A stretch of DNA of 63,101 bases, counting the filler, from Octopus bimaculoides (Eukaryota), in NCBI RefSeq assembly GCF_001194135.2. It is 4 parts of 4 records of this genome, joined end to end, with 100 filler letters (N's around TTAATTAATTAA, not from the genome) between each part and the next. Parts side by side here need not be neighbours in the genome. Positions count along the whole stretch, not along the records: positions 35,411 to 60,469 come from NC_068981.1; 3 more parts are not named here. One strand, given 5' to 3'. A program made the translations under genes and the position numbers. The notes under the pieces were generated by a model, which was not told the origin of the DNA, searched no databases, and saw only the letters and a list, made by a program, of their open reading frames with translations. Shown here piece by piece: positions 36,159-59,564 of the stretch. Positions within the stretch are counted from its first letter, which is position 1. The number at the start of each line of letters is the position of its first letter.

Positions 36159-36290
36159 CATTTTCAAAAGGAGATGCATTGATTTGACTTGGTTCATCAA
36201 TCACAACTGAGTTGGTTTCTGTAACCATTCCAGACATGGGACTATAAAGTTCACTCACAGATTTCACACTTTCGATCTCACCACACTGCT
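36159..36290 (-). CDS. GCSH: GCSH exon 4 (132 nt) with lipoyl-lysine
   Basis: TCTTTTATAG acceptor and GTAACA donor. Encodes (Q)QCGEIESVKSVSELYSPMSGMVTETNSVVIDEPSQINASPFEN(G). The lipoylated Lys of ESVK is the AAA codon at 36262-36264. Confidence 0.95.
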
Positions 36291-37020
36291 CTATAAAAGA
36301 ATAAAAAATAGAATGAAATTAACAAACGATCATATAATAAATAATCAGTAACATATGCTCGTAATGGAATACACTCAATGTCACAAAAGCATAGTTTGAT
36401 AAGATTAATGATAGTACAGATAGAGCAGAAATAAGAATCAGATGTCTAAATCCCAGTTTTATCTTCATTATAATTAACTTCTGAAAACACAATGGTTATG
36501 ATTGAAGAAAGCAATTCTTAATTGTCTAACTTCACACGTGCATGAGCATCTTTGTCAATCTATTGTTGGAAATGTTTGGCTACACAGAAGTACTAACTCA
36601 GTTCCTGCATCTTTAGTAAAGGTACCATTGAACAGCTGGAATCTGCTCTACATTGATTAAATAAAGAGAGTGAAGACAAGTGAAAAAAAATCTATCCTGA
36701 AAATACTTAGACAAGAACAACCATCACATATCTGATTCTTCTTATATATACACGTATATACACACACATACATACATGGTGTTTTACACTTTTTATTATA
36801 AGAGAGAATTTTTTCTCCACAGTAACTGCAGCGAATTTGCCTTTAGAAGTTGAACTATATCACAAACTAACCTAAAATTCACTTATGCTTAAACACTGCT
36901 TGGCACTGACACTACTGTATATATATATATATATNNNNNNNNNNNNNNNNNNNNNNNNNNNNNNNNNNNNNNNNNNNNNNNNNNNNNNNCAAAAAATAAC
37001 AACAAAAACACAAAGGATTC

Positions 37021-37087
37021 TGCGGTATACGTGTTTCAAGCTTTATAGCAGTGTATAATTGACAATACAAAGCTATCTTCAGCCGCA
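37021..37087 (-). ncRNA. Minimal type I hammerhead ribozyme motif (left arm; sense to GCSH pre-mRNA)
   Basis: TGCGG-CTGAAGA-T-AGCTTTGTA..TATAAAGCT-T-GAAA-CACGTA-T-A-CCGCA. Perfect helix I, intact core boxes; helix III is one substitution from the palindrome. Confidence 0.75.
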
Positions 37088-37740
37088 AAAGTATTTCTCT
37101 CCCAAGAAATTATATCACATCGGCGTTAAAGGAGGAAGAAAGGTGTGATATAAAAGGTGAAGTTCCTTTCGGTATTTTGCATTGTACTATACCTCGTAGA
37201 ATTCTCCATCTACACATAATTTCCTTGGTACTCCAAAAACCATCCATACCTTGCCACGATTCAGTGTGTAGTGTTAAGTTGGTGGTTAAGAACAATATAA
37301 TAAAATGACAAGAACGAAATAACAATATAAAATAAAATGGGAATATAAACAGGATTTTATATTCCCATTTTATTAATCCCACATCACCAGTTCTGCTTAC
37401 CAAAAGTGGCCCACTTGGCACCGTGCATTCTTCGCAAGAATCGCGCAAAATAAATTCCGAACGATTCGTAAACAGGATTTTATATTCCCATTTTATTTTA
37501 TATTGTTATTTCGTTCTTGTCATTTTATTATATTGTTCTTAACCACCAACTTAACACTACACACTGAATCATGGCAAGGTATGGACGGTTTTTGGAGTAC
37601 CAAGGAAATTATGTGTAGATGGAGAATTCTACGAGGTATAGTACAATGCAAAATACCGAAAGGAACTTCACCTCTTATATCACACCTTTCTTCCTCCTTT
37701 AACGCCGATGTGATATAATTTCTTGGGAGAGAAATACTTT

Positions 37741-37807
37741 TGTAGCTGAAGATAGCTTTGTATTGTCAATTATACACTGATATAAAGCTTGAAACACGTG
37801 TACCGCA
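37741..37807 (+). ncRNA. Minimal type I hammerhead ribozyme motif (right arm of inverted repeat)
   Basis: TGTAG-CTGAAGA-T-AGCTTTGTAT..ATATAAAGCT-T-GAAA-CACGTG-T-A-CCGCA. Both core boxes intact, 10-bp helix II, palindromic helix III ACACGTGT, GUA cleavage triplet. Helix I has one mismatch and one wobble. Confidence 0.8.
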
Positions 37808-38309
37808 GAATCCTTTGTGTTTTTGTTGTTATTTTTTGCATTTACAATTTATTCTTTCACCTCAACCACGAGCTGGCATACACAGGTGCTTACAATTGTC
37901 AAGTATTGCCTCTAACTTTTACCTTACCTATATATATATGTATGTATGTATGAAGCAATGTGGCAGAAGTATTCAATTACAGAAATGAAATTGTTATCAC
38001 ATCTACAGGCATTAATTACTGTGTGGTAGAAGATTCACTTCAGATCTACAGTTTGGAGTCTGCTTTCATGGTGTGGATGCTGTTAGCTGCTGTCCTCAAC
38101 CATAGTAATGGGTTGACCAATATCTTGTGGTAAACATAAATGGAAACTGGAAGAAGTCCATTGTATGTGTGTGTATATGCATTCATGACCGAGTGCATGT
38201 TACCCTTGTTTTGTCATAAAAACCCATAAAAATGGCAATATTTGTTTGCAATCTTCCATGTGGAAACATAGGCCTAAAATAGTAAAAAGCACTATTTGAA
38301 CATGGTCGA

Positions 38310-38522
38310 TACCAGTGCCACTTGACTGGCCCCTGTGCTGGTGGCACATAAAAAGCACCCACTACACTCTCGGAGTGGTTGGTGTTAGGAAGGGCATCCA
38401 GCTGTAGAAACCTTGCCAGATTAGATCGGAGCCTGGTGCAGCCTCCTGGCTTGCCAGTCCTCAGTCAAACCATCCAACCTATGCCAGCATGGAAAGCGAT
38501 GATGATGATGATGATGATGATG
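38310..38522 (+). mobile_element. RTE LINE 3'-UTR fragment (GCSH intron 3)
   Basis: Same family tail, ending in (GAT)n. Confidence 0.75.
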
Positions 38523-39755
38523 AATGTGTCTCTAGGCTTTATAGAGGGACACCACCTGATCTGGACAGAGATTTTTCTTGATTCTGAGAGATCATCTGAA
38601 ATTGTGATGTCTAGCAATTGAGGCAACATTACTAAAGACTAGAGAGCTTGAAATATAAAGCTGTTTATTTCATATGAACACTGATCAAATCCTTGTGCTA
38701 TAGCCTGAGACTAGATTGATACATCTCATTTCAAAGAAAGTTGTAAGGTATCTGCCCATGAAGTCTACAAGTCTACTTATTATTGGCATGAATTATTCAA
38801 ATTACAAGTGGATGACATGTGCAGAAGGATTAAGTTAAGATTGAAGTGTAATATCATTTATACAGAAGTATGTATTATTAGACGTGACAACAAGTAGATT
38901 ATTAATATACAGAAGAATGCCAGATATTAACAAACTTTGGTGTACATCAACATTTGTAGAAGGAGGTCGGTAAGACCCTTGTCATAAACAATGTTACATT
39001 TTGTAAGCTACCACTTATGCAAACATATGCAGACACATGCACTAATTCAAGCAGTACCCATATCAATTTACCTATTCACTGCAGATATATAACTTCCATC
39101 CTCATTTTACCAACTGACTTGTAAATTTAGCAATTTACAAGTTTATTTATTGCATTTTTGTAAATTATCTGTGTTTCAGTGAAAATAGTATTTTTTGGTA
39201 TGAATTGTAATTGTATGCAGAATACTGCTTTTTAAATTTCAACTTCTAGCTTATGAAACAGTATGCAGAATCAAGACATAAAAAGGAAACTGAATTGTAG
39301 ATCTGTATAATATATACTAGCATGAAGATATAGACATAAATAATAATGATAAAGCATATTCAATTCCAGTTTGCTATGCCTCTATTAGTGTCACAGATAG
39401 GATACAGTGGAAGAGTCTGTCTTCCATTACCAATTCTTTGCAAGTATGAATTTTAACTTCTTGCACACTGTAGGTGCATCACGTCACTGTATGAGTTTTC
39501 TCCCCTGCAGCAACAGGGCAGTGGCAGGGGAAACAATTCTGGAGAAACTGTAGTGTGCTTAAAGGTTAAGACTTTTGTGAAGTAAATGTGATTTTTAACC
39601 TTCATATAGCTCTCAATGGTACAAGTATTATAAATACTTCATACAAGTGATATGAAGCAGGTATAATCAGATTGTTGTGGACTTACCAAATTCTAAACAT
39701 TCTCCTCTACATTTGATAAGATTATAGCAGAAATAAAAATGCATAACAAACTTAC

Positions 39756-39819
39756 GTCCTATCTTTAACTCTGTACCAATGTCGGGTAACGATACAAAAA
39801 CTATTTCACCAATAGCATC
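39756..39819 (-). CDS. GCSH: GCSH exon 3 (64 nt)
   Basis: CTTTCTAACAG acceptor and GTAAG donor. Encodes DAIGEIVFVSLPDIGTELKIG, matching the H-protein motif (E/D)ALGDVV(Y/F)xxLPxxG. Confidence 0.95.
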
Positions 39820-40511
39820 CTGTTAGAAAGACAAAGAAAAGATGTAAGTTCAAAAAATACAAAACAGGCAATACCCAAGTGGATAAGCTTTTGGCTTGGA
39901 AACTCAAAGTTCTGGATTTCTTTTGCTGAAATGTTTCATTATTTCTCAAAGCAGGATATTTGAATCTTTGGGTGATTGTTTACTTTGCAGTTCCAGTTCA
40001 TTGAAACACATATCATTAACAATGTGTAAAATAACTGATGTAATTTTCCCAATTATACATTTCAGTGGATTTGAATCCAAGTCTTTGAGCTGCTAGATCA
40101 ATACTATATCCATTTGGTATCTTTAGTAACTATATATAAAGTAAATAAGATACAGACTGGTCAATTTTTATATCTTTCAATTACCTGCTTTCTATCCTCA
40201 ATTTAATAAATAAATACATAAAGAAGCAAAGAGAGCAGCCCCAAAGAGCTGCTGTTTTAAAGCAGAAGAACTTGGTAAGGTGCTAGAAGGATACAGTTAT
40301 TTTTAAAAAGTTAAGTGTGACAAGCAAGACTGACAGATAATCATTGAAAGAGACTGTGATGAAAGGTTAATAATATATCAGTGATCATCATCATCTTTTA
40401 ACATCTCTTTTCCAGTCTGGCATGGGTTAGACTAGCAGTTCTCAACCATTTTTTTAAAACTATGTACCCCTCTGATTCCTATTTTATCCTGGTGGATCCC
40501 CATAGCCATTT

Positions 40512-41387
40512 CATCATCATCATCATCATCGTTTAACGTCCGCTTTCCATGCTAGCATGGGTTGGACGATTTGACTGAGGACTGGTGAAACCGGATGGCA
40601 ACACCAGGCTCCAGTCTAATTTGGCAGAGTTTCTACAGCTGGATGCCCTTCCTAACGCCAACCACTCAGAGAGTGTAGTGGGTGCTTTTACGTGTCACCC
40701 GCACGAAAACGGCCACGCTCGAAATGGTGTCTTTTATGTGCCACCCACACANNNNNNNNNNNNNNNNNNNNNNNNNNNNNNNNNNNNNNNNNNNNNNNNN
40801 NNNNNNNNNNNNNNNNNNNNNNNNNNNNNNNNNNNNNNNNNNNNNNNNNNNNNNNNNNNNNNNNNNNNNNNNNNNNNNNNNNNNNNNNNNNNNNNNNNNN
40901 NNNNNNNNNNNNNNNNNNNNNNNNNNNNNNNNNNNNNNNNNNNNNNNNNNNNNNNNNNNNNNNNNNNNNNNNNNNNNNNNNNNNNNNNNNNNNNNNNNNN
41001 NNNNNNNNNNNNNNNNNNNNNNNNNNNNNNNNNNNNNNNNNNNNNNNNNNNNNNNNNNNNNNNNNNNNNNNNNNNNNNNNNNNNNNNNNNNNNNNNNNNN
41101 NNNNNTCTTGGTCAGTAGTCATCGCCTCGGTGAGGCCCAATGTACGAAGGTCTTGCCTCACCACCTCAGCCCAGGTCTTCCTGGGCCTACCTCTTCCATG
41201 GGTTCCCTCAACTGTTAGGGTGTGGCACTTTTTCACGCAGCTATCCTCATCCATTCTCACCACATGTCCATACCAGCGCAATCGTCTCTCTTCCACACCA
41301 CAACTGATGCTTCTAATGTTCAGCTTTTCTCTCAAGATACTTACACTCTGACGGGTATTCACATTGACATTACACATCCAACGGAGC
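40512..41387 (-). mobile_element. RTE-clade LINE, 5'-truncated, partly gapped
   Basis: Reads ..LREKLNIRSI..ERRLRWYGHVVRMDEDSCVKK..GRGRPRKTW..; same 3' UTR and (GAT)n tail as 6548-7390. Confidence 0.85.
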
Positions 41388-41503
41388 TAGATTTATAGAA
41401 ACTTCTTCAAAAATTCCTATTTTGTTTTCCACACATAAACTTGTGGAGGTTGAACCATGTAAAATATTAGAGAAAGAAACCTAACTGTTTCTTGCAATAC
41501 ATA

Positions 41504-41910
41504 CATCATCGTTTAACGTCTGCTTTCCATGCTAGCATGGGTTGGACGATTTGACTGAGGACTGGTGAACCAGATCGCAACACTAGGCTCCAATCTGATT
41601 TGGCAGAGTTTCTACAGCTGGATGCCCCTTCCTAACGTCAACCACTCATAGAGTGTAGTGGGTGCTTTTACGTGCCACCGGCACGAAGGCCAGTCAGGCG
41701 GTAATGGCAACGGCCACGCTCAAAATGGTGTATTTTACGTGCCACCTGCACAGGAGCCAGTTCAGCGGCACTGGCAACGATCTCGCTCGAAAGTCCTTAC
41801 ACATGCCACGACACAAGTGCCAGAAAGGCGACACTGGGCACAGGTACCATCATGATTTCGCTTTCGCTTGCCCCAACAGGTCTTCGCAAGTCGAGTTTCG
41901 TGTCCAAAGG
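41504..41910 (-). mobile_element. RTE LINE 3'-UTR fragment
   Basis: Shares CATCATCGTTTAACGTC..CATGGGTTGGACGATTTGACTGAGGACTGGTG..GGATGCCCTTCCTAACG with the copies above. Confidence 0.8.
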
Positions 41911-42439
41911 GCCCTTAAAATACTACTGTGAATCCCCAATTTACTATTTTGTTGTGTGAACCCCAAAAACTCTTATATGGACCCTAGCTGAGAACCACTA
42001 GATCAGATGGTTTGACTGGAGCTAGTAAGCTGGAGAACTGCACCAGGCTGCAGTTTGTTTTGGTTTGGTTTCCACGGCTGGATGTCCTTCCTAATGCCAA
42101 CTACTCCATAGTGTACTGAGTGTCTTTAATGTGTCACTGGCACAGGTGCCTTTTTGTGTGTCACTGGTACAGGTACTTTAGCCTGTCACCAGCATAGGTG
42201 CCTTTAGCATGGATGAGATGCAACCTGATTAAGTGAGCCTAGGCTATAATAGAATATCATTAACATCAGGTCATTAATATTATATATTATTACAAAAATG
42301 ATGCATTATTCATAACTCACCTTTTCATACACAAAATATCCATTGTTCAGAGAATGGTTTACTGTTACTATTAAACTTGGAGTGGGGGCTAAATGTGGCT
42401 GATCACATTAGTGTACCATATAGGTTTTTTTTAAACCCT

Positions 42440-42675: not shown

Positions 42676-44489
42676 TAGCTTGTGTAGAATTTTTTGTTTC
42701 TTCGTATTGTTACAACAACACAAACCATAATTGAGGCAAAACAAAGAATAATCTGATCTTCCACTGTTTCTACTTATAGCATGCTACTTTGGAGTGTTGC
42801 GATCTTAATCCCAAGTCAGTCTTGATCGAGCAGACTTATGATCAAGGTGTGATCTTGCCTTTTATTCAGACCTAACTCAACATTATCCAGGGTGTTTGTT
42901 TATTCTATGATGGCAGAGCACGAGGTAAGAGAGTTTTCTATCAGACATAGCAACTATATAGATCCCCTCACTGGTTCATGAAAAGTTTCAAGCTTGCAGT
43001 GTCAATGAACACTTTCCCTAGGCTACTTGCATTGTATACTGCACTAATGCATGTAAAGCACTTCAAAGTATTAATCTTCTACAAGTATATAAACAACCTT
43101 ACTATATCTCTTTCCCACTTCTTAAATACTAAATCTAAAATTTTTAATCATTTAGTCTGGAGAAAGGGTAGTGCCCCTAACCCTTTTCAGGGCCTCTGGA
43201 GATTGGTGGGAGAAAGGAATGTTATCCTCAAACCAGAGGCCAACCCCGAATGCTTATAACATGAGTGGGCTTAACCCTTTGCCAGTCCAAAGCCTTTTCA
43301 AAAGTTTGCTCTAAACATCCATGCTCGTTTTCAGACTTTTAGTTAGCCCTTGTTTCATACATTATGAGTAATATAAAGCTTTCCTTTTATAAGTACCAAG
43401 TTACTTTGGTGACCAAAAAAAAAAAACAATTGGAAATGTGTATCATATATGATGCATGGATGTCAGGGAAATATGTCTTGTGCAAAGGGTTAAAGCACCC
43501 AAGAGACAAGTGTTGGTGTTAAACCAGGAGACAGATTACATCAACCACCCAAACAGACCATGGTGGAATTTGAACAAAGAATGCAAATGCAAAGATCCAA
43601 AACNNNNNNNNNNNNNNNNNNNNNNNNNNNNNNNNNNNNNNNNNNNNNNNNNNNNNNNNNNNNNNNNNNNNNNNNNNNNNNNNNNNNNNNNNNNNNNNNN
43701 NNNNNNNNNNNNNNNNNNNNNNNNNNNNNNNNNNNNNNNNNNNNNNNNNNNNNNNNNNNNNNNNNNNNNNNNNNNNNNNNNNNNNNNNNNNNNNNNNNNN
43801 NNNNNNNNNNNNNNNNNNNNNNNNNNNNNNNNNNNNNNNNNNNNNNNNNNNNNNNNNNNNNNNNNNNNNNNNNNNNNNNNNNNNNNNNNNNNNNNNNNNN
43901 NNNNNNNNNNNNNNNNNNNNNNNNNNNNNNNNNNNNNNNNNNNNNNNNNNNNNNNNNNNNNNNNNNNNNNNNNNNNNNNNNNNNNNNNNNNNNNNNNNNN
44001 NNNNNNNNNNNNTATATAGCCAGGCATTTAAGAAGGTAGTGAATTAGCAGAAGTGTGGCTCACATCCTATATACTAAAATCTCATTTTTTTAAACACTAA
44101 ATTTATTACTACTATCATCATCATCATCATCGTTTAACGTCTGCTTTCCATGCTATGTTAATTTGCTATCTATAAAGCATTACCTTTGTATAAATTTAGT
44201 TTTGGTGACTGAATACCACAGAATATTATTGTGTGTATTAAATATCAACCAATGAAAACTATTCAGCCAATTGAAGTACAATGCCATAAAGGTAAATACT
44301 GCTTCATCATTGTTATTCATGTTGCCAGACATTTAAAAACCTTGATAAAGGATGATACAAACATATATACAAATATACATATGTATGATTACATATACAT
44401 GCACATACATAAGTGTGTGTGTGTACATAATATACTTTTATATAATCTTGGAATGTCAGAAACTCCACGCTTCACAGTAATACTACGTT

Positions 44490-44757: not shown

Positions 44758-44930
44758 CGAGGGGGTGCTGAAAAGTTCCTGGCTTTGGGTAAAAGAAAAT
44801 ACAGGGGAATCAGTTAATTATGTCTTTATTCAATATATTCCGTTCAGATTCACACACTTGTACAGCAGTCCTTTAGTTTTTCTAAGCCCTGTAAGAGAAC
44901 TCGGAACATTGGGCCTCCAACCAAGCCTTT
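44758..44930 (+). mobile_element. Mariner-type terminal fragment
   Basis: Begins CGAGGGGGTGCTGAAAAGTTCC, resembling mariner TIRs; no partner end found. Confidence 0.45.
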
Positions 44931-45070
44931 CATGGTTCCTATGGCTGGATGCCCTTCCAAACACTAATGCCTTACAGAGTGTGCTGGTTGTTCTTATGTG
45001 GCACTGCACAGACACTTTTACATGGTACCACACAGGCACTTTTTCATATATATATATATATATATATATA

Positions 45071-46975: not shown

Positions 46976-47580
46976 ATTAATAGTAGATAGAATGTAAAAA
47001 TCTTAGAATATACGGTCAGCCAATCTGTGACAAAATTAGAGAAATGACTAATTGACGATGTGACAAAAATAAATAGATGAATGAATGAATGAGTGACGAT
47101 AGGGTATTTGTGTGAACTTGAGTTTGTTTTTAAGACAGAAGACGAAAACTATGCGTACAGAACTAAGAGGGGATTATGATCTGCGCTGAAATAGAGGTGA
47201 TAGATGTACTGAGTTGAAGAAAAAACAAGATTCCTTATCTGAGCAACATCTTCTGGCTGTATTCTTTTGGCGGAGTTATTGAAATGTGGTAGGAATATGG
47301 GAGAGCAAGTTCATATAGAGTGGGATGGTGGAGGAGGAGGTAAGTGATTGAAGAAGCGAGTGGTTATTGAAAGAAGGAGAGAGAAAGAGAGAGAGAGAGA
47401 GAGAGTGATTGAGAGTGGTTATCGAAAGAGAGAGAGACAATGCCGGTGTTATGATAGACACGAGGGGGAGAGAAATAATTCTTTTGGGGTCTTTGTGAAA
47501 CATAATTTTAATGAAACAGCAAATTAATAGTAGATAGAATTAAAAAATCTTAGAATATTCGGTCAGCCAATCTGTGACAA
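46976..47580. repeat. 58-bp direct repeat pair flanking 489 bp
   Basis: 46976-47033 versus 47523-47580, 3 mismatches. Confidence 0.85.
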
Positions 47581-47586
47581 TGTATA

Positions 47587-47626
<40 letters not shown>

Positions 47627-47679
47627 AAACCCATACTAGCACAGACAATAGACATTAAATGATGATGATGATATATATC

Positions 47680-48144: not shown

Positions 48145-48224
48145 CTGAGCATAATCAGAAATCCCGATTGTTCCAACACCATTACTAATGGAAATCCATT
48201 CATGGGACTTGTTATAAAATCTCT
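48145..48224 (-). CDS. GCSH: GCSH exon 2 (80 nt)
   Basis: Poly-T tract, TTTAG acceptor and GTAAG donor. Encodes (E)RFYNKSHEWISISNGVGTIGISDYAQ, matching the H-protein HEW...GTxGISxxAQ motif; the 80-nt size agrees with vertebrate GCSH exon 2 as I recall it. Confidence 0.95.
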
Positions 48225-48516
48225 CTAAAGAAAAAAAAAAAGGAAAAAATAAACATGGAATACAGAATTTAAAAAAAGACTTGTGGAAATTGAGCACTTG
48301 TCTCTTTTGTTGTCAACCAAATGTAATTACTGATATTAATGTTGCTAGATCAAAATCTGTTGACAAAAAATGAATATATATATTCAATGCCAAGCATGAA
48401 GTAATTGTTATGTAGCGAAGAAAACAATGACTGATTTGTTCAGGCAGAAATATATTTTATAGGAAATCAGAAGGAAGATAGATCGAGATAAAGTGGGAGA
48501 GAGAGAGAGAGAGCGA

Positions 48517-49399: not shown

Positions 49400-51175
49400 T
49401 TAATCTAATAACACAAGATCTATGATTTAAAATTATTAGATAATGAGTTTTGTTACGAAAATAAAATTATTGAGAAGACTGAGAGCATCAAAAATATCAG
49501 CCATGTATGCTAAAATGAGAATGAACTCAGAACTTTTGAAGCAATCTACATGACAATGTTGGTACTCTCGCAAAAACAGGGCTAATTCTACATGCATAGC
49601 AAAAATAAAATTCAGCACCTTTCCTGGGATAACCACCAAACGTTAGAATGGTATAGAAGTACCTCGAATTCAGAGCCCATTTCATTACACAGCTCTTTGA
49701 AGATGCAGTGCTTCACAGTACTATTTCACATGTAGTTCACAAATTCAACTACAAGTTTTAATACTTCTGCCAGTTTTGGAGGCAAGATTTTTGTTACCAA
49801 TTCATGCTTGTGTAGAACACAATATGTAACAATGATGTGTGGTGCATCGGATTTCACCACCACTCCAAAACCAGAGTGTCATCTCAGCATGGCTGGAGTT
49901 CTGTCCGAACAAACTGCAGAAATCATATTCCATGAAAGCCCATTGTCTCTGAAGAAGCTATCCATGAGTTTCTTCACATCAGCTACCTTGGTTTTTGTTG
50001 TAAGAGGCTTACAAAATAAATAAAATCTTCCTTTATCATGTTGTCTTTCACATAGCGCATGAATACAAGAAGCTGGCTCAGATTCAAAACATTGGTGGTC
50101 TTGTCAAGTTGGAGGTTGAATTTTGCTGGGTTTGAAATCAGATCTGCAACTACTTGAACCAAGATGTCATCGCTCACATCATACATTCTGCTGCTGATAG
50201 TGTTATTTTAAAGAGGAATTTGGGATAACTTATCTTCAGCAGCTTTTCCCAGCATATTTGCCATCTTCAAAGCAGCTGGTTTTACGAGTGTTTTGCCAAT
50301 GGTGTGTGGTCTGCCCTGCTTTGCGATCAGGTACGCAACTTCGTACAATGCTGTGAGGATCAGTTTGTTGATGAGTACAAAGCCAAGAACAGGCAGAGTA
50401 ACATTTTCATTGAATCTGACTTGTTTCACCTTGAATTCAGCAAGTGTTGTGTTCTTGTATTTCCCATCTCCATGCAGCTTTAGGAAGTGTTCTTTTAGTT
50501 TTGCCGGTGCTAGACTAGAATTGCTCAACTTGGCATTGCAAATCATGAGGATGCTAAGTCCCATCACGTTCCGTTATAGATGTGATGTCATACTGTATGT
50601 ATTCGTTCAACCACTTTCTGTTTTTTCAACATAGTATAAAGGGTTTAAAAGATTAAAAGAAAATCACAAATGATGTCCAATCACAACAGCCACAAGTGGA
50701 CTACTGAGCGCACCAAGTTCCCTGCAGCACAGATATCAAAGCCAAGCGATGTGGCATGATCAGCTGCAGCCAATGACGTCACAAATAATACGAGTGGGCT
50801 GAAAGGATCGAGGGGACATACACACACAAGCCTGGGCCAATTTTTTGCTTTGTTCAAAACTTAAAAATTTTTTTTATTTATTTATAAATTAATATTCTAA
50901 AATTAAATTTTATACTGTTATTGTAATTTATCTTTTAATAAACTAGCTTATCATGGAAATTTATTTTGTGTAACAAATTTTTACTATGCAACTAAATCTC
51001 TGTAATCTAACATGGTGAAGTAAAGTTGTGTTGCCAAATTGTCGGCAGCCGACAAAAATAGTCCACCATTGCTAATGTGAACCAGGCTATACTGTGTGTA
51101 TTTTGATCCCTGCTGAACCCGAAACTGACTCAATGAACCCCTAGGGTTTGATCGAACCCAAGTTAAGAACCACTG
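49400..51175 (-). pseudogene. hAT (Buster/Charlie, SCAND3/ZBED5-like) transposon, decayed
   Basis: Reads ..CNAKLSNSSLAPAKLKEHF..YEVAYLIAKQGRPHTIGKTLVKPAA..IPL*NNTISSRM..LQLDKTTNV..QLLVFMRY. The 5' TIR CAGTGGTTCTTAAC ends at 51175; multiple frameshifts. Confidence 0.85.
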
Positions 51176-51607: not shown

Positions 51608-51715
51608 TTGGAGCCTGGTGTTGCCATCCGGTTTCACCAGTCCTCAGTCAAATCGTCCAACCCATGCTAGCATGGAAAGCGGACGTTAAACGATGATGAT
51701 GATGATGATGATGAT
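51608..51715 (+). mobile_element. RTE LINE extreme 3' fragment (GCSH intron 1)
   Basis: CCAGTCCTCAGTCAAATCGTCCAACCCATGCTAGCATGGAAAGCGGACGTTAAACGATGATGATG. Confidence 0.8.
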
Positions 51716-53800: not shown

Positions 53801-55184
53801 ACCTGTGTGTATGTGCATATTTTTCACTCAGGCGAGAAACATGAAAAACCATAGCTAATTGAATGAAGTCCCTCCTACAACCACAATATGTGGTCTCTAA
53901 ATGAGGGTAACTTTCAAATATTTTCATGTTTGTTTACATCATTTTACTTATATAAGCAAATAAAGTCAGTTACTATTGAAAGTTATTAGATCTAGAGTGG
54001 AAATAGGCCAGTAGTTGAATATCTAAGAAATATTATTGCTGCTCTACTTTTCTCATTTACACATAAACGTAAAAACAACTGATAACAAAACATTAAAAAG
54101 AAAGAAACAAGGCGAACCAATAAAAAATAACTATTGCTTGACATGTAAAGCAGAACTGCAAACAAGGCAAATAAACTTTCGTTCATAGGGTGAGTTCTAA
54201 TGTGAAAAATAATCTAAATATGAATATTTTATATGTAAATATTTTGTTATTCAAAAACTTGTTTTCATTTTTAATTCATTAACCCTTTCCAGACACCTTT
54301 TGAAAGGAAATAAAGTAAAACACAAAGTAAAGTTAATGTGGTTTAATGTTCAGTTTGAACTGTTCAAAACATCAACAGTAGAAGGGGAGAAAAAGGTACA
54401 GAGAATTAGTTCTGTAAAGGGTAGGATGGGTTGTCACTAGTTGGTGAAAGGGTGGAATAAAGACGCAATGAGTTGAAGGACAGAATCTAAGTAGGTTTGA
54501 GGTGGAGATAGCAAGTTAAAAATAGCAGAAGCTGAAGTCTCAGTTGAAAAGAGAGGCATCCTTGAAGGATTTTTTCTTTTGTTTTGAGTTCAAATTTATG
54601 CAGAACTTTCTGAATAGTCGTCACAACATATAGTGAAATTGGATTTCTCCGTTTTGGTGATGATTTTTACAAATAATTTTGTATCACACATTTTAAACGT
54701 AAAACTAGATTGACTATCTCTATAGTATTACCTGTCTTGAAGCCTTTTCCCAGGCATAATTACACAAGTGTGCCCCCGACTTTGTTTCCTCATAATTTTC
54801 AGAAAAATGGACACTTTTTAATGAAAATTTTCTACAAATAAGCTTCAGATGATGTAGATTCCAATTTTATCGGAATTGTGAACATTTTTTCCGGAAGTGG
54901 GTAGAGGAGTTTAGGAAAATTCATGCGAGCGGCTTTGATTCTTCATATCTTTCAGAAAAATGGATATTTTTTAAATGAAATTTTCAACAAATATCTTTCA
55001 GCGTGTGTGGATTCGATATCAGAATTAATAAGGGAAAAAATTAAAAAAATGCTGGGCACGCATGCTGATATATTTGTCCTATCGCTTCACCGAAGACAGG
55101 GTACTGAGATGTTTGGCAAATAACTAATTTGTTTTCACTGACTGCACAGTCAGAACGTGAAAATAAGGAATGAGTGAGTCGGTA

Positions 55185-56144: not shown

Positions 56145-56271
56145 CAGAATACGATCGAGAAGATAGGCTGAAATGTCTGTATTTCTGTAATGATGTTAGT
56201 ACTGGTGAGGATCGGCTCATTAACCTAGCAGCGCAAGAACAAGCATTCCGTCCAAGAGCAACAAGCGCCAT
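56145..56271 (-). CDS. GCSH: Glycine cleavage system H protein, exon 1 (mitochondrial transit peptide)
   Basis: ATG at 56271 reads MALVALGRNACSCAARLMSRSSPVLTSLQKYRHFSLSSRSYS (R/S/L-rich, no acidic residues) plus 1 nt, followed by a GTAAG donor. Phase 1 joins exon 2 in frame (G+AG = Glu). Confidence 0.85.
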
Positions 56272-58812: not shown

Positions 58813-59516
58813 TAAGTCCTCATCAACTTTTCCAGTTTCACTTGAAAAGGAATCTGAGGGTGGAGAGGGAAGTGCTGCCTCCCAGCAACTTAGTGAAAAG
58901 GTGCGTGAAAGGGCACATGTCAGGGCAACCGTGGTTTTGTGGGAATTCCTCTGTTTCCTCCTTTGGGGAAATTATTCATTGTTATAATTTTATATTGTTA
59001 CTATTTTTTAAAAACTTTTTACACGCTTTTTATGTAACCCTACATTGTATTGTCCTGTACCGTCCTCAATGTTTTTGTGAATCTTTAGTGTTTAATAAAG
59101 AAAACATTATTATTATTGTTAAATCTCTGAATGAGATATAAACAGTAACTGCACGACTTCCCTTTGCAAATACCGACAGGACACATCTGTGTGTCAATAA
59201 CCAGCTGGAGATGTTCTCCTGGAGCTAAAAGCAACAGTAACGTTCACCCTTAGGGTTTAGCCGCATTTAAGTGGCAAATATACTTCACATTATTATTGAG
59301 CTTTTTTGCTTGTATATTCAGACATATATGCATACACATACTCATGCGAGTGTACACATGCACATACACGCATGCATACATACACATATGCGCGCATCTC
59401 TCTTTCTCATTATATATATGTATATATACATATATATACATACAAACAAAACTGTCCGATGAACGGGAAAGTGAAACTCTGAGTAACAGGTTTTGTAATA
59501 TTTCTGCTGCTTTTTA

Positions 59517-59564
<48 letters not shown>

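What the first reader, a model, noticed from the sequence alone, without database searches (positions are those of the whole stretch)
36990..37838. Twin hammerhead ribozymes locked inside a 360-bp hairpin in GCSH intron 3
Seen: two 360-bp arms in inverted orientation with 7 mismatches, each carrying a complete hammerhead core (37021-37087 minus, 37741-37807 plus). The left copy has a perfect helix I but one change in the helix III palindrome. The right copy has the perfect ACACGTGT palindrome but a CG-to-TA change in helix I, so the consensus of the two is an intact ribozyme. Established: minimal type I hammerheads with palindromic helix III occur in Penelope-like element pseudo-LTRs and are thought to cleave as dimers; coleoid cephalopods have very high ADAR A-to-I editing. 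Inference: GCSH is transcribed on the minus strand, so the antisense right arm is made first. The sense ribozyme would then emerge into a ready-made complement and be silenced, unless editing or helicases open the duplex. This could act as a conditional intron-cleavage switch ~730 nt upstream of the lipoyl-lysine exon, or it may simply be the reason the insertion was tolerated.
Basis: partly seen in the sequence, partly recalled or inferred. Interest (0 to 1): 0.9.

Follow-up and report, generated by a model that had tools for sequence, protein, structure and literature searches.

The report
Penelope-type retrotransposon fossil, inverted pair
The inverted repeat with two hammerhead-like motifs is real, but it is the usual head-to-head footprint of a Penelope-like retrotransposon that landed in a (TA)n microsatellite inside an octopus GCSH intron and is now decaying, not a ribozyme switch.

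Summary
Arms 36990-37349 and 37479-37838 are 360 nt with 7 mismatches. Each carries a type I hammerhead core with a palindromic helix III. The host gene is GCSH on the minus strand, and the element lies in intron 3. Exons 1-3 are identical to an Octopus bimaculoides protein model.

The architecture is the published signature of Penelope-like element (PLE) insertions: two 5'-truncated copies head to head, 3' ends outward, (TA)n on both outer sides, and the ribozyme motif near each 3' end. Removing one 123-nt unit at the centre restores a palindrome with a 6-nt loop and a 4-nt microhomology. That is a snap-back signature.

The arms differ mainly at CpG sites, and 4 of the 7 differences lie inside the ribozyme motifs, so I see neutral decay and no constraint. 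The only copy that is sense in the pre-mRNA has a damaged helix III palindrome. It lacks the conserved G10.1-C11.1 pair, has no sense partner to dimerise with, and lies at the base of a predicted -644 kcal/mol hairpin. No Rfam hammerhead model matches.

A conditional cleavage switch is not supported. No relatives could be retrieved, so PLE membership rests on architecture, not on RT/EN homology. The left arm abuts an assembly gap.

The parts
36918..36934 (.). Left flanking (TA)n microsatellite, one half of the target
   Evidence: (TA)8 run directly before the gap. (TA)>=5 runs cover only 1.1% of the piece.
36935..36989 (.). Assembly gap (55 N) that hides the outer (3') end of the left copy
   Evidence: N run. 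The right copy has 89 nt (37839-37927) for which the left counterpart would fall here.
36990..37349 (-). Left arm: a 5'-truncated element copy, sense on the minus strand (the same sense as the GCSH pre-mRNA)
   Evidence: 360 nt, 98% complementary to 37479-37838
37018..37090 (-). Left hammerhead-like motif. Helix I is 37083-37090 / 37018-37025. The core CUGAAGA is at 37076-37082. H17 is at 37026. Helix III is ACACGUAU.
   Evidence: The only hit of my descriptor in the piece, against 0 comparable hits in 4000 shuffles. No Rfam match.
37350..37355 (.). 6-nt loop (CAGGAT) of the inferred original snap-back palindrome, next to the TAAA/TTTA microhomology
   Evidence: 37331-37349 and 37356-37374 form a perfect 19-bp stem around it
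37375..37497 (+). 123-nt unit (94 nt of 48% GC sequence with 7 CpG, plus a 29-nt direct repeat) present in the right half only. It is an indel at the palindrome centre.
   Evidence: 29-nt direct repeat 37346-37374 = 37469-37497. Removing the unit restores a 360-bp palindrome with a 6-nt loop and the same 7 mismatches.
37479..37838 (+). Right arm: element copy, sense on the plus strand (antisense in the GCSH pre-mRNA)
37738..37810 (+). Right hammerhead-like motif. The core is at 37746-37752. The helix III palindrome ACACGUGU is at 37794-37801. H17 is at 37802. Helix I is broken by TA at 37743-37744.
   Evidence: It fails my helix I criterion. The homodimer is predicted to form an 8-bp intermolecular helix III.
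37839..37927 (+). 3' continuation of the right copy up to the microsatellite. It may include the 30-40 bp PLE 'tail'.
   Evidence: Unique sequence between the arm end and (TA)n. That it belongs to the element is inferred.
37928..37950 (.). Right flanking (TA)n(TGTA)n microsatellite, the other half of the target
   Evidence: (D2)
36159..36290 (-). GCSH exon 4 (132 nt, ...IESVKSVSELYSP..., lipoyl-lysine), the next exon downstream in the transcript
   Evidence: Pfam GCV_H E=1.5e-13. ag/gt splice sites. tblastn.

Best explanation
This is the fossil of one retrotransposition event by a Penelope-like element (PLE), or by a non-autonomous RNA that PLE machinery mobilised.

Inferred sequence of events:
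1. An AT-rich (TA)n microsatellite in GCSH intron 3 was cut.
2. The 3' part of the element RNA, which carries the minimal type I hammerhead near its end, was reverse-transcribed.
3. The nascent cDNA snapped back on itself at a TAAA/TTTA microhomology, or both cut DNA ends primed synthesis. Either route gives two 5'-truncated copies head to head with their 3' ends outward.
4. A 123-nt indel between 29-nt direct repeats later broke the central symmetry.
5. The two arms have since diverged by about 2%, mostly by CpG decay, and each ribozyme motif has been damaged.

The hammerhead served the element's own life cycle, if it served anything. For the host it is inert. In the GCSH pre-mRNA only the left copy is sense. 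It is a dimer-dependent, weak motif with a damaged palindrome, and it lies at the base of a long duplex made of about 360 bp arms. The likely host-level consequence is just a long intronic dsRNA hairpin.

Shown: the anatomy, the statistics and the gene context. Inferred: the insertion mechanism, the order of events and the inactivity.
For: Anatomy:
- Inverted arms with 7 mismatches.
- (TA)n on both outer sides, although (TA)>=5 runs cover only 1.1% of the piece.
- The motif lies about 30-100 nt inside the known arm end, and the right copy continues to the microsatellite.
- A snap-back centre: removing one 123-nt unit gives a 360-bp palindrome with a 6-nt loop and a 4-nt microhomology.

Motif: beyond chance, 0 comparable hits in 4000 shuffles. 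It has the extra nucleotide after A9, a long helix II and the 8-nt palindrome described for PLE minimal hammerheads (PMC4209133).

Decay: 4 of 7 differences fall in the 20 CpG positions (Fisher p=2e-4), and 4 of 7 fall inside the 67-nt motif (p=0.026).

Literature:
- PMC8557442: PLE insertions are heavily 5'-truncated, often have an adjacent inverted 5'-truncated copy, prefer (TA)n, carry a 30-40 bp tail at one end and disturb short-read assemblies.
- PMC4209133: dual minimal hammerheads on opposite strands, 100-700 bp apart.
- PMC11167929: a PLE protein cleaves and extends both DNA strands at AT-rich sites, and its hammerhead needs the protein and is dispensable for insertion in vitro.
- PMC6962438: Penelope elements and 235 Hammerhead_1 hits in a squid genome.

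Hairpin and dimer predictions: MFE -644 kcal/mol. The left copy does not form the dimeric helix III in cofold.
Against: - No RT or GIY-YIG coding sequence is present in the locus, and Pfam finds nothing in the arm ORFs.
- No second copy lies in the 25-kb piece.
- No relatives were found in any searchable collection. Family membership is therefore architectural only.
- No Rfam hammerhead model matches.
- The G10.1-C11.1 pair, called highly conserved in PLE minimal hammerheads, is replaced by U.U followed by A-U.
- The left arm abuts a gap, so the left outer junction is unseen.
- The origin of the 94-nt central segment is unknown.
Confidence: 0.75

Rival explanations
1. A fold-back inverted duplication or a foldback/MITE-type DNA element that is not produced by PLE integration. 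One version: a solo repeat copy was later duplicated in inverted orientation by hairpin-primed DNA repair or replication template switching. Another version: the whole unit is a long-TIR DNA transposon inserted at TA. The hammerhead-like motif would then be a passenger.
For: The 4-nt microhomology and 6-nt loop at the centre are also the hallmark of DNA-level fold-back inversions. Insertion at TA also suits Tc1/mariner-type elements. There is no RT/EN sequence in the locus.
Against: The duplication stops at or within the (TA)n on both sides and does not copy host flank. The left flank is not the reverse complement of the right flank beyond (TA)n. The motif has several features specific to PLE minimal hammerheads and is far beyond chance. 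Inverted adjacent copies are documented as typical of PLE insertion (PMC8557442).
Confidence: 0.12
2. Assembly artefact. The short-read contig folded back, or joined reads from different copies of a repeat family, next to the gap. The genome would then hold only one arm at this site.
For: The left arm begins exactly at the N run 36935-36989. The piece has four gaps and looks like a short-read assembly. PLE structures are known to cause assembly problems (PMC8557442).
Against: Both arms, the loop and the 123-nt unit lie in one gap-free contig, 36990-40751. A fold-back artefact would give identical arms, yet they differ at 7 sites with a CpG-decay pattern. The stem at the junction is only 19 bp, shorter than usual assembly k-mers. 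The asymmetric 123-nt unit is hard to produce by a strand flip.
Confidence: 0.07
3. The sense hammerhead is a conditional intron-cleavage switch for GCSH, held off by the hairpin and released by A-to-I editing or by helicases.
For: The transcription order and the masking logic are correct. The core nucleotides of the sense copy are intact. Coleoids edit dsRNA heavily (established knowledge, not tested here).
Against: - Mutations are enriched in the motifs rather than depleted.
- The sense copy has two mismatches in the 8-bp dimer helix III and has no sense partner in cis.
- G10.1-C11.1 is missing.
- PLE minimal hammerheads cleave poorly, and the one tested in a reconstituted system needed the PLE protein (PMC4209133, PMC11167929).
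- Editing would turn A-U pairs into I.U mismatches along the whole duplex, and it would also hit core adenosines that are needed for catalysis.
- The arms differ by only about 2%, so the insertion looks young. A housekeeping gene is unlikely to depend on it.
Confidence: 0.03

Closest known systems
Minimal type I hammerheads (min-HHR) in the pseudo-LTRs of Penelope-like elements (Cervera & de la Pena 2014, PMC4209133)
   Same: An open helix I (type I). The CUGANGA and GAAA boxes. An extra nucleotide after A9. A long helix II. A very short helix III whose sequence is an 8-nt palindrome, which allows a dimeric ribozyme. Occurrence as pairs on opposite strands a few hundred bp apart, mostly in truncated copies.
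   Different: 10.1/11.1 is U.U followed by A-U, not the highly conserved G-C. Helix II carries an unusually large 16-18 nt loop region. Helix I is 8 bp in the left copy, longer than the 4-5 bp described. No family alignment or covariation could be obtained.
PLE insertion architecture: 5'-truncated copies, inverted adjacent copy, (TA)n targets, one-sided tail (Craig et al. 2021, PMC8557442). In vitro, a PLE protein cleaves and extends both strands at AT-rich DNA (PMC11167929).
   Same: Two 5'-truncated copies head to head, (TA)n on both sides, a possible extra stretch at one end, and an assembly gap at the structure.
   Different: No full-length or ORF-bearing copy is attached. This is only a pair of 3' fragments of about 450-580 nt. 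The PLE clade cannot be assigned.
Non-LTR retrozymes of animals (Cervera & de la Pena 2020, PMC7229834; bioRxiv 10.64898/2026.07.22.740005)
   Same: Short non-coding repeats with type I hammerheads. They are related to PLE pLTRs and are common in introns (about 43% of the Xenopus copies).
   Different: Retrozymes are direct tandem repeats that yield circular RNAs. Here the copies are inverted, and there is no tandem unit.
Inverted-repeat transposon pairs in introns that form long dsRNA (for example inverted Alu pairs in primates; established knowledge)
   Same: A near-perfect intronic duplex made of about 360 bp arms. The expected fate is ADAR editing or small-RNA processing.
   Different: No editing or small-RNA data were available here.

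Membership tests
Hammerhead ribozyme (catalytic core) | C3-U4-G5-A6-N7-G8-A9 box, G12-A13-A14, A15.1-U16.1 and H17 (not G), in the right order around three helices | tested here: met
   Both copies have CUGAAGA ... GAAA-CACGU(G/A)-U-A.
Hammerhead ribozyme (catalytic core) | Helix I of at least 4 contiguous pairs flanking the core and the cleavage site | tested here: inconclusive
   The left copy has 8 bp. The right copy is broken by an A x C mismatch next to the closing pair.
Hammerhead ribozyme (Rfam Hammerhead_1, _3, _II, HH9, HH10) | A match to a curated covariance model | tested here: not met
   No hammerhead hit at E<=1 on the piece, at E<=10 on 911 nt, or at E<=10 on 91-nt stretches.
Hammerhead ribozyme | Site-specific self-cleavage | not testable with these tools
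   This needs in vitro transcription and mapping of RNA ends.
PLE minimal hammerhead (Cervera & de la Pena 2014) | [quoted passage not shown] | tested here: met
   A U follows CUGAAGA before the AGCUUU stem. A U also faces it on the 3' side (alignment).
PLE minimal hammerhead (Cervera & de la Pena 2014) | The highly conserved G10.1-C11.1 pair | tested here: not met
   The pair is U.U, or A-U if the two U are counted as bulges, in both copies.
PLE minimal hammerhead (Cervera & de la Pena 2014) | Palindromic 15.2-16.2 / loop 3, allowing a dimeric helix III | tested here: met
   Right copy: ACACGUGU is a perfect palindrome and forms 8 intermolecular pairs in cofold. Left copy: ACACGUAU matches at 6 of 8 positions and does not form the helix.
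PLE minimal hammerhead (Cervera & de la Pena 2014) | Consensus families with covariation within a genome | not testable with these tools
   No eukaryotic genome collection is on hand. Scans of metagenome and viral contigs and a protein search all found nothing.
Penelope-like element insertion | 5'-truncated copies with an adjacent inverted copy | tested here: met
Penelope-like element insertion | AT-rich / (TA)n target | tested here: met
   (TA)n at 36918-36934 and 37928-37941. The background coverage is 1.1%.
Penelope-like element insertion | Homology to a PLE RT / GIY-YIG ORF, or to a pLTR of such an element | tested here: not met
   The locus has no such ORF. Pfam finds nothing in the arm ORFs. 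Short truncated copies are not expected to keep one. No PLE consensus library was available to compare the non-coding sequence.
Penelope-like element insertion | A 30-40 bp tail at one end | tested here: inconclusive
   The right copy has 89 nt beyond the arm and the gap is written as 55 N. The 34-nt difference would fit, but gap sizes are estimates.
Non-LTR retrozyme | Direct tandem repeats of a hammerhead-bearing unit | tested here: not met
   The copies are inverted. The only direct repeat is the 29-nt one.

The most novel reading that the evidence does not exclude
The long intronic hairpin (about 360 bp arms) acts on GCSH expression in the octopus. It could be an ADAR or small-RNA substrate that affects splicing of the neighbouring lipoyl-lysine exon. 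The only public O. bimaculoides protein model I found skips exactly that exon, in frame. Alternatively, the sense hammerhead could cleave when the duplex is opened.
Probability: 0.04. Interest if true: 0.6.

Novelty: new member of a known kind. Interest (0 to 1): 0.15.

Why it matters
Mostly it does not, and that is the useful result. A striking feature, twin ribozymes inside a hairpin in a housekeeping gene, turns out to be the ordinary footprint of a known retrotransposon class.

Three minor points have some value:
- It is a clean example of a PLE-type snap-back junction, with a 4-nt microhomology and a 6-nt loop, followed by an indel that breaks the central symmetry.
- It shows a hammerhead variant with U.U at 10.1/11.1 in a cephalopod.
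- It is a reminder that Rfam models miss these minimal motifs.

Tried and rejected
- Rfam at three scales found no hammerhead. The only hits were hairpin-shaped miRNA models matching the inverted repeat itself or TA/TG low-complexity runs. I rejected those as artefacts.
- Looking for relatives failed. The arm ORF had no homologue in the protein database. Two exact-pattern scans of metagenome contigs and one gapped-pattern scan of viral contigs gave 0 hits. No supplementary sequence files were held for the two key PLE papers.
- Looking for the orthologous or independently assembled locus failed. The short exon-4 peptide found nothing. The 92-aa peptide found the O. bimaculoides UniRef model only, and no contig is on record for it.
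- Coding potential of the arms: the ORFs of 71 and 112 aa have no Pfam match, so I treat them as chance ORFs.
- A second copy in the piece: blastn with word size 7 found none.
- I considered and rejected a native 44-nt hairpin as the cause of an assembler strand flip. The stem is 19 bp and the arms differ.
- I considered reading the 129-nt spacer as unrelated filler. I prefer the reading that it is 6 nt of loop plus a 123-nt indel between 29-nt direct repeats. I cannot tell a deletion in the left half from a duplication or insertion in the right half.

Full report
**1. Observation**

The region holds one inverted repeat with arms at 36990-37349 and 37479-37838. The arms are 360 nt, 98% complementary and 129 nt apart. 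A base-by-base comparison gives exactly 7 differences, 6 transitions and 1 transversion. The left arm starts at the edge of a 55-N gap (36935-36989), so its outer end is not seen. The right copy continues for 89 nt (37839-37927) up to a (TA)n run. No other copy of the arm lies in the 25-kb piece.

**2. The hammerhead motifs**

Both arms carry CUGAAGA, then a long stem-loop, then GAAA, then an 8-nt stretch, then A (H17), then a strand complementary to the bases before the core. The motif is on the minus strand in the left arm and on the plus strand in the right arm.

- My own descriptor required helix I and helix II of at least 4 bp each, allowed one optional unpaired base at each end of helix II, and allowed up to 12 nt between A15.1 and U16.1.
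- It finds the left copy only. C3 is at 37082 and H17 at 37026. Helix I is 8 bp and helix II is 9 bp.
- The right copy fails because CG->TA at 37743-37744 breaks helix I.
- Helix III is the perfect palindrome ACACGUGU in the right copy and ACACGUAU in the left copy.
- In 4000 dinucleotide shuffles of the piece, the relaxed descriptor hit 62 times. A motif with helix I >=5, helix II >=6 and a >=75% palindromic helix III never appeared. The motif is not a chance match.
- No Rfam hammerhead model matches, even when only 91 nt are searched at E<=10.
- The pair next to the core, 10.1/11.1, is U.U followed by A-U. It is not G-C.

**3. Gene context**

Exon 4 of a glycine-cleavage H protein lies at 36159-36290 on the minus strand. 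It has ag/gt splice sites, the ESVK lipoyl-lysine motif and a Pfam GCV_H match at E=1.5e-13. Exons 3, 2 and 1 lie at about 39756-39820, 48145-48227 and 56146-56271. Exons 1-3 are 100% identical to a UniRef protein of Octopus bimaculoides.

The element therefore sits in intron 3. Only the left motif is sense in the pre-mRNA, and the antisense right arm is transcribed first.

**4. What it is**

The literature describes this architecture for Penelope-like elements.

- Craig et al. 2021 (PMC8557442) report heavy 5' truncation and, often, an adjacent inverted 5'-truncated copy that makes inverted repeats. They also report a preference for (TA)n, a 30-40 bp tail at one end, hammerheads near the 3' end, and trouble in short-read assemblies.
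- Cervera and de la Pena 2014 (PMC4209133) describe the minimal type I hammerhead of PLE pseudo-LTRs. It has an extra nucleotide after A9, a long helix II and a palindromic helix III, and it acts as a dimer with low activity in vitro. They note pairs of such motifs 100-700 bp apart on opposite strands.
- A 2024 in vitro study (PMC11167929) shows a PLE protein that cuts and extends both strands of AT-rich DNA. Its hammerhead cleaves only with the protein present and is not needed for insertion in vitro.
- Cephalopod genomes carry Penelope elements and hammerhead hits (PMC6962438).

The features seen here fit that description. Both outer flanks are (TA)n (36918-36934 and 37928-37941), while (TA)>=5 runs cover only 1.1% of the piece. 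The 3' ends point outward, and the motifs sit near those ends.

**5. The centre**

The 129-nt spacer is not arbitrary. The left arm ends in ...GGGAATATAAA. Then comes CAGGAT, then 19 nt (37356-37374) that are the exact complement of the last 19 nt of the left arm. A 29-nt direct repeat (37346-37374 = 37469-37497) brackets 94 nt of GC-richer sequence (48% GC, 7 CpG).

Removing one 123-nt unit restores a 360-bp palindrome with a 6-nt loop and the same 7 mismatches. TAAA/TTTA flanks the loop.

I read this as a snap-back of the nascent cDNA, or of a DNA end, at a 4-nt microhomology. A 123-nt indel between the direct repeats followed. It was either a deletion in the left half, if the 94 nt are native element sequence, or a duplication in the right half. 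Long perfect palindromes are unstable, and central asymmetry stabilises them (established knowledge). This step is inferred.

**6. No sign of constraint**

- Four of the 7 differences fall in the 20 positions that are CpG in either arm (Fisher p=2e-4).
- Four of the 7 fall inside the 67-nt motif (binomial p=0.026).

This pattern fits methyl-CpG decay of two real genomic copies. It argues against a simple assembly fold-back, which would give identical arms, and against selection on the ribozymes. The Kimura distance between the arms is 0.020.

**7. Would the sense ribozyme work?**

- As RNA, the minus strand of 36990-37838 folds into one hairpin of -644 kcal/mol. The left motif sits at its base and is transcribed last.
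- The pre-mRNA has one sense copy only, so it has no partner in cis for the dimeric helix III.
- In cofold the right copy, and a hybrid with the left helix I and the right palindrome, form the 8-bp intermolecular helix III. The native left copy does not. Its monomer fold pairs core bases C3-U4 elsewhere.
- Add the missing G10.1-C11.1 and the published weak, protein-assisted activity of such motifs.

Cleavage of the GCSH intron is therefore unlikely. These are predictions, not assays.

**8. Rivals**

- A DNA-level fold-back duplication or a long-TIR DNA element: 0.12.
- An assembly artefact: 0.07.

Evidence for and against each is set out in the rival entries of this report.

**9. Limits**

I could not retrieve any related sequence. 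No eukaryotic genome collection was on hand, and all scans were empty. PLE membership therefore rests on architecture and motif type, not on RT/EN homology or family covariation. One defining feature of the published motif class, G10.1-C11.1, is not met.

**10. Verdict**

The feature is a new member of a known kind and is of low interest.

Noticed in passing
window 36159-36290 (minus strand): The only public Octopus bimaculoides GCSH model I found (UniRef, P0029, 122 aa) joins exon 3 directly to exon 5. It lacks this 132-nt lipoyl-lysine exon. In the window the exon is intact, in frame and has ag/gt splice sites. This is probably an annotation error, but it is the exon next to the hairpin.
   Followed up: partly
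window 38351-38498, 40384-40751, 41499-41800, 42028-42107, 44114-44190, 44915-45013, 51609-51711: At least seven copies, in both orientations, of a SINE-like repeat with an (ATC)n/(GAT)n end (ATCATCATCGTTTAACGTC...CATGCTAGCATGGGTTGGAC...). Two copies are 100% identical over 103 nt (40511-40613 / 51609-51711). The GCSH introns are full of transposon debris.
   Followed up: partly
window 40688-41377 (minus strand): An ORF interrupted by the gap 40752-41105 that encodes ...RLRWYGHVVRMDE...GRGRPRKTW.... From memory this resembles the C-terminal tail of non-LTR (LINE) reverse transcriptase proteins. Pfam gave no match.
   Followed up: partly
window 50208-50567 (minus strand): A 119-aa ORF (...LKEHFLKLHGDGKYKNTTLAEF...AKQGRPHTIG...) that looks like a fragment of a domesticated or decayed transposase-type protein. 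Pfam gave no match, so it is unidentified.
   Followed up: partly
window 37375-37468: The 94-nt central segment is much richer in GC (48%) and CpG (7 sites) than the arms (33% GC). Its origin is unknown. It could be native upstream element sequence, such as part of a pLTR promoter region, or it could be filler.
   Followed up: partly
window 44354-44455, 47566-47647, 59321-59556: Rfam miRNA models (mir-297, mir-466, mir-3149 and others) hit TA/TG low-complexity runs, all far below their gathering scores. These are false positives of hairpin-shaped models.
   Followed up: no
window 54777-54861 and 54930-55014: Two 85-nt direct repeats, 78% identical and 153 nt apart. Their nature is unknown.
   Followed up: no
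window 37856-37890: Downstream of the right hammerhead lies a small AC-rich stem-loop candidate (CACCUC...ACACAGGUG), about 40-70 nt from the insertion end. PMC11167929 places PLE reverse-transcription initiation in an AC-rich stem-loop. I did not test this, and the MFE fold of the region did not form that stem.
   Followed up: no
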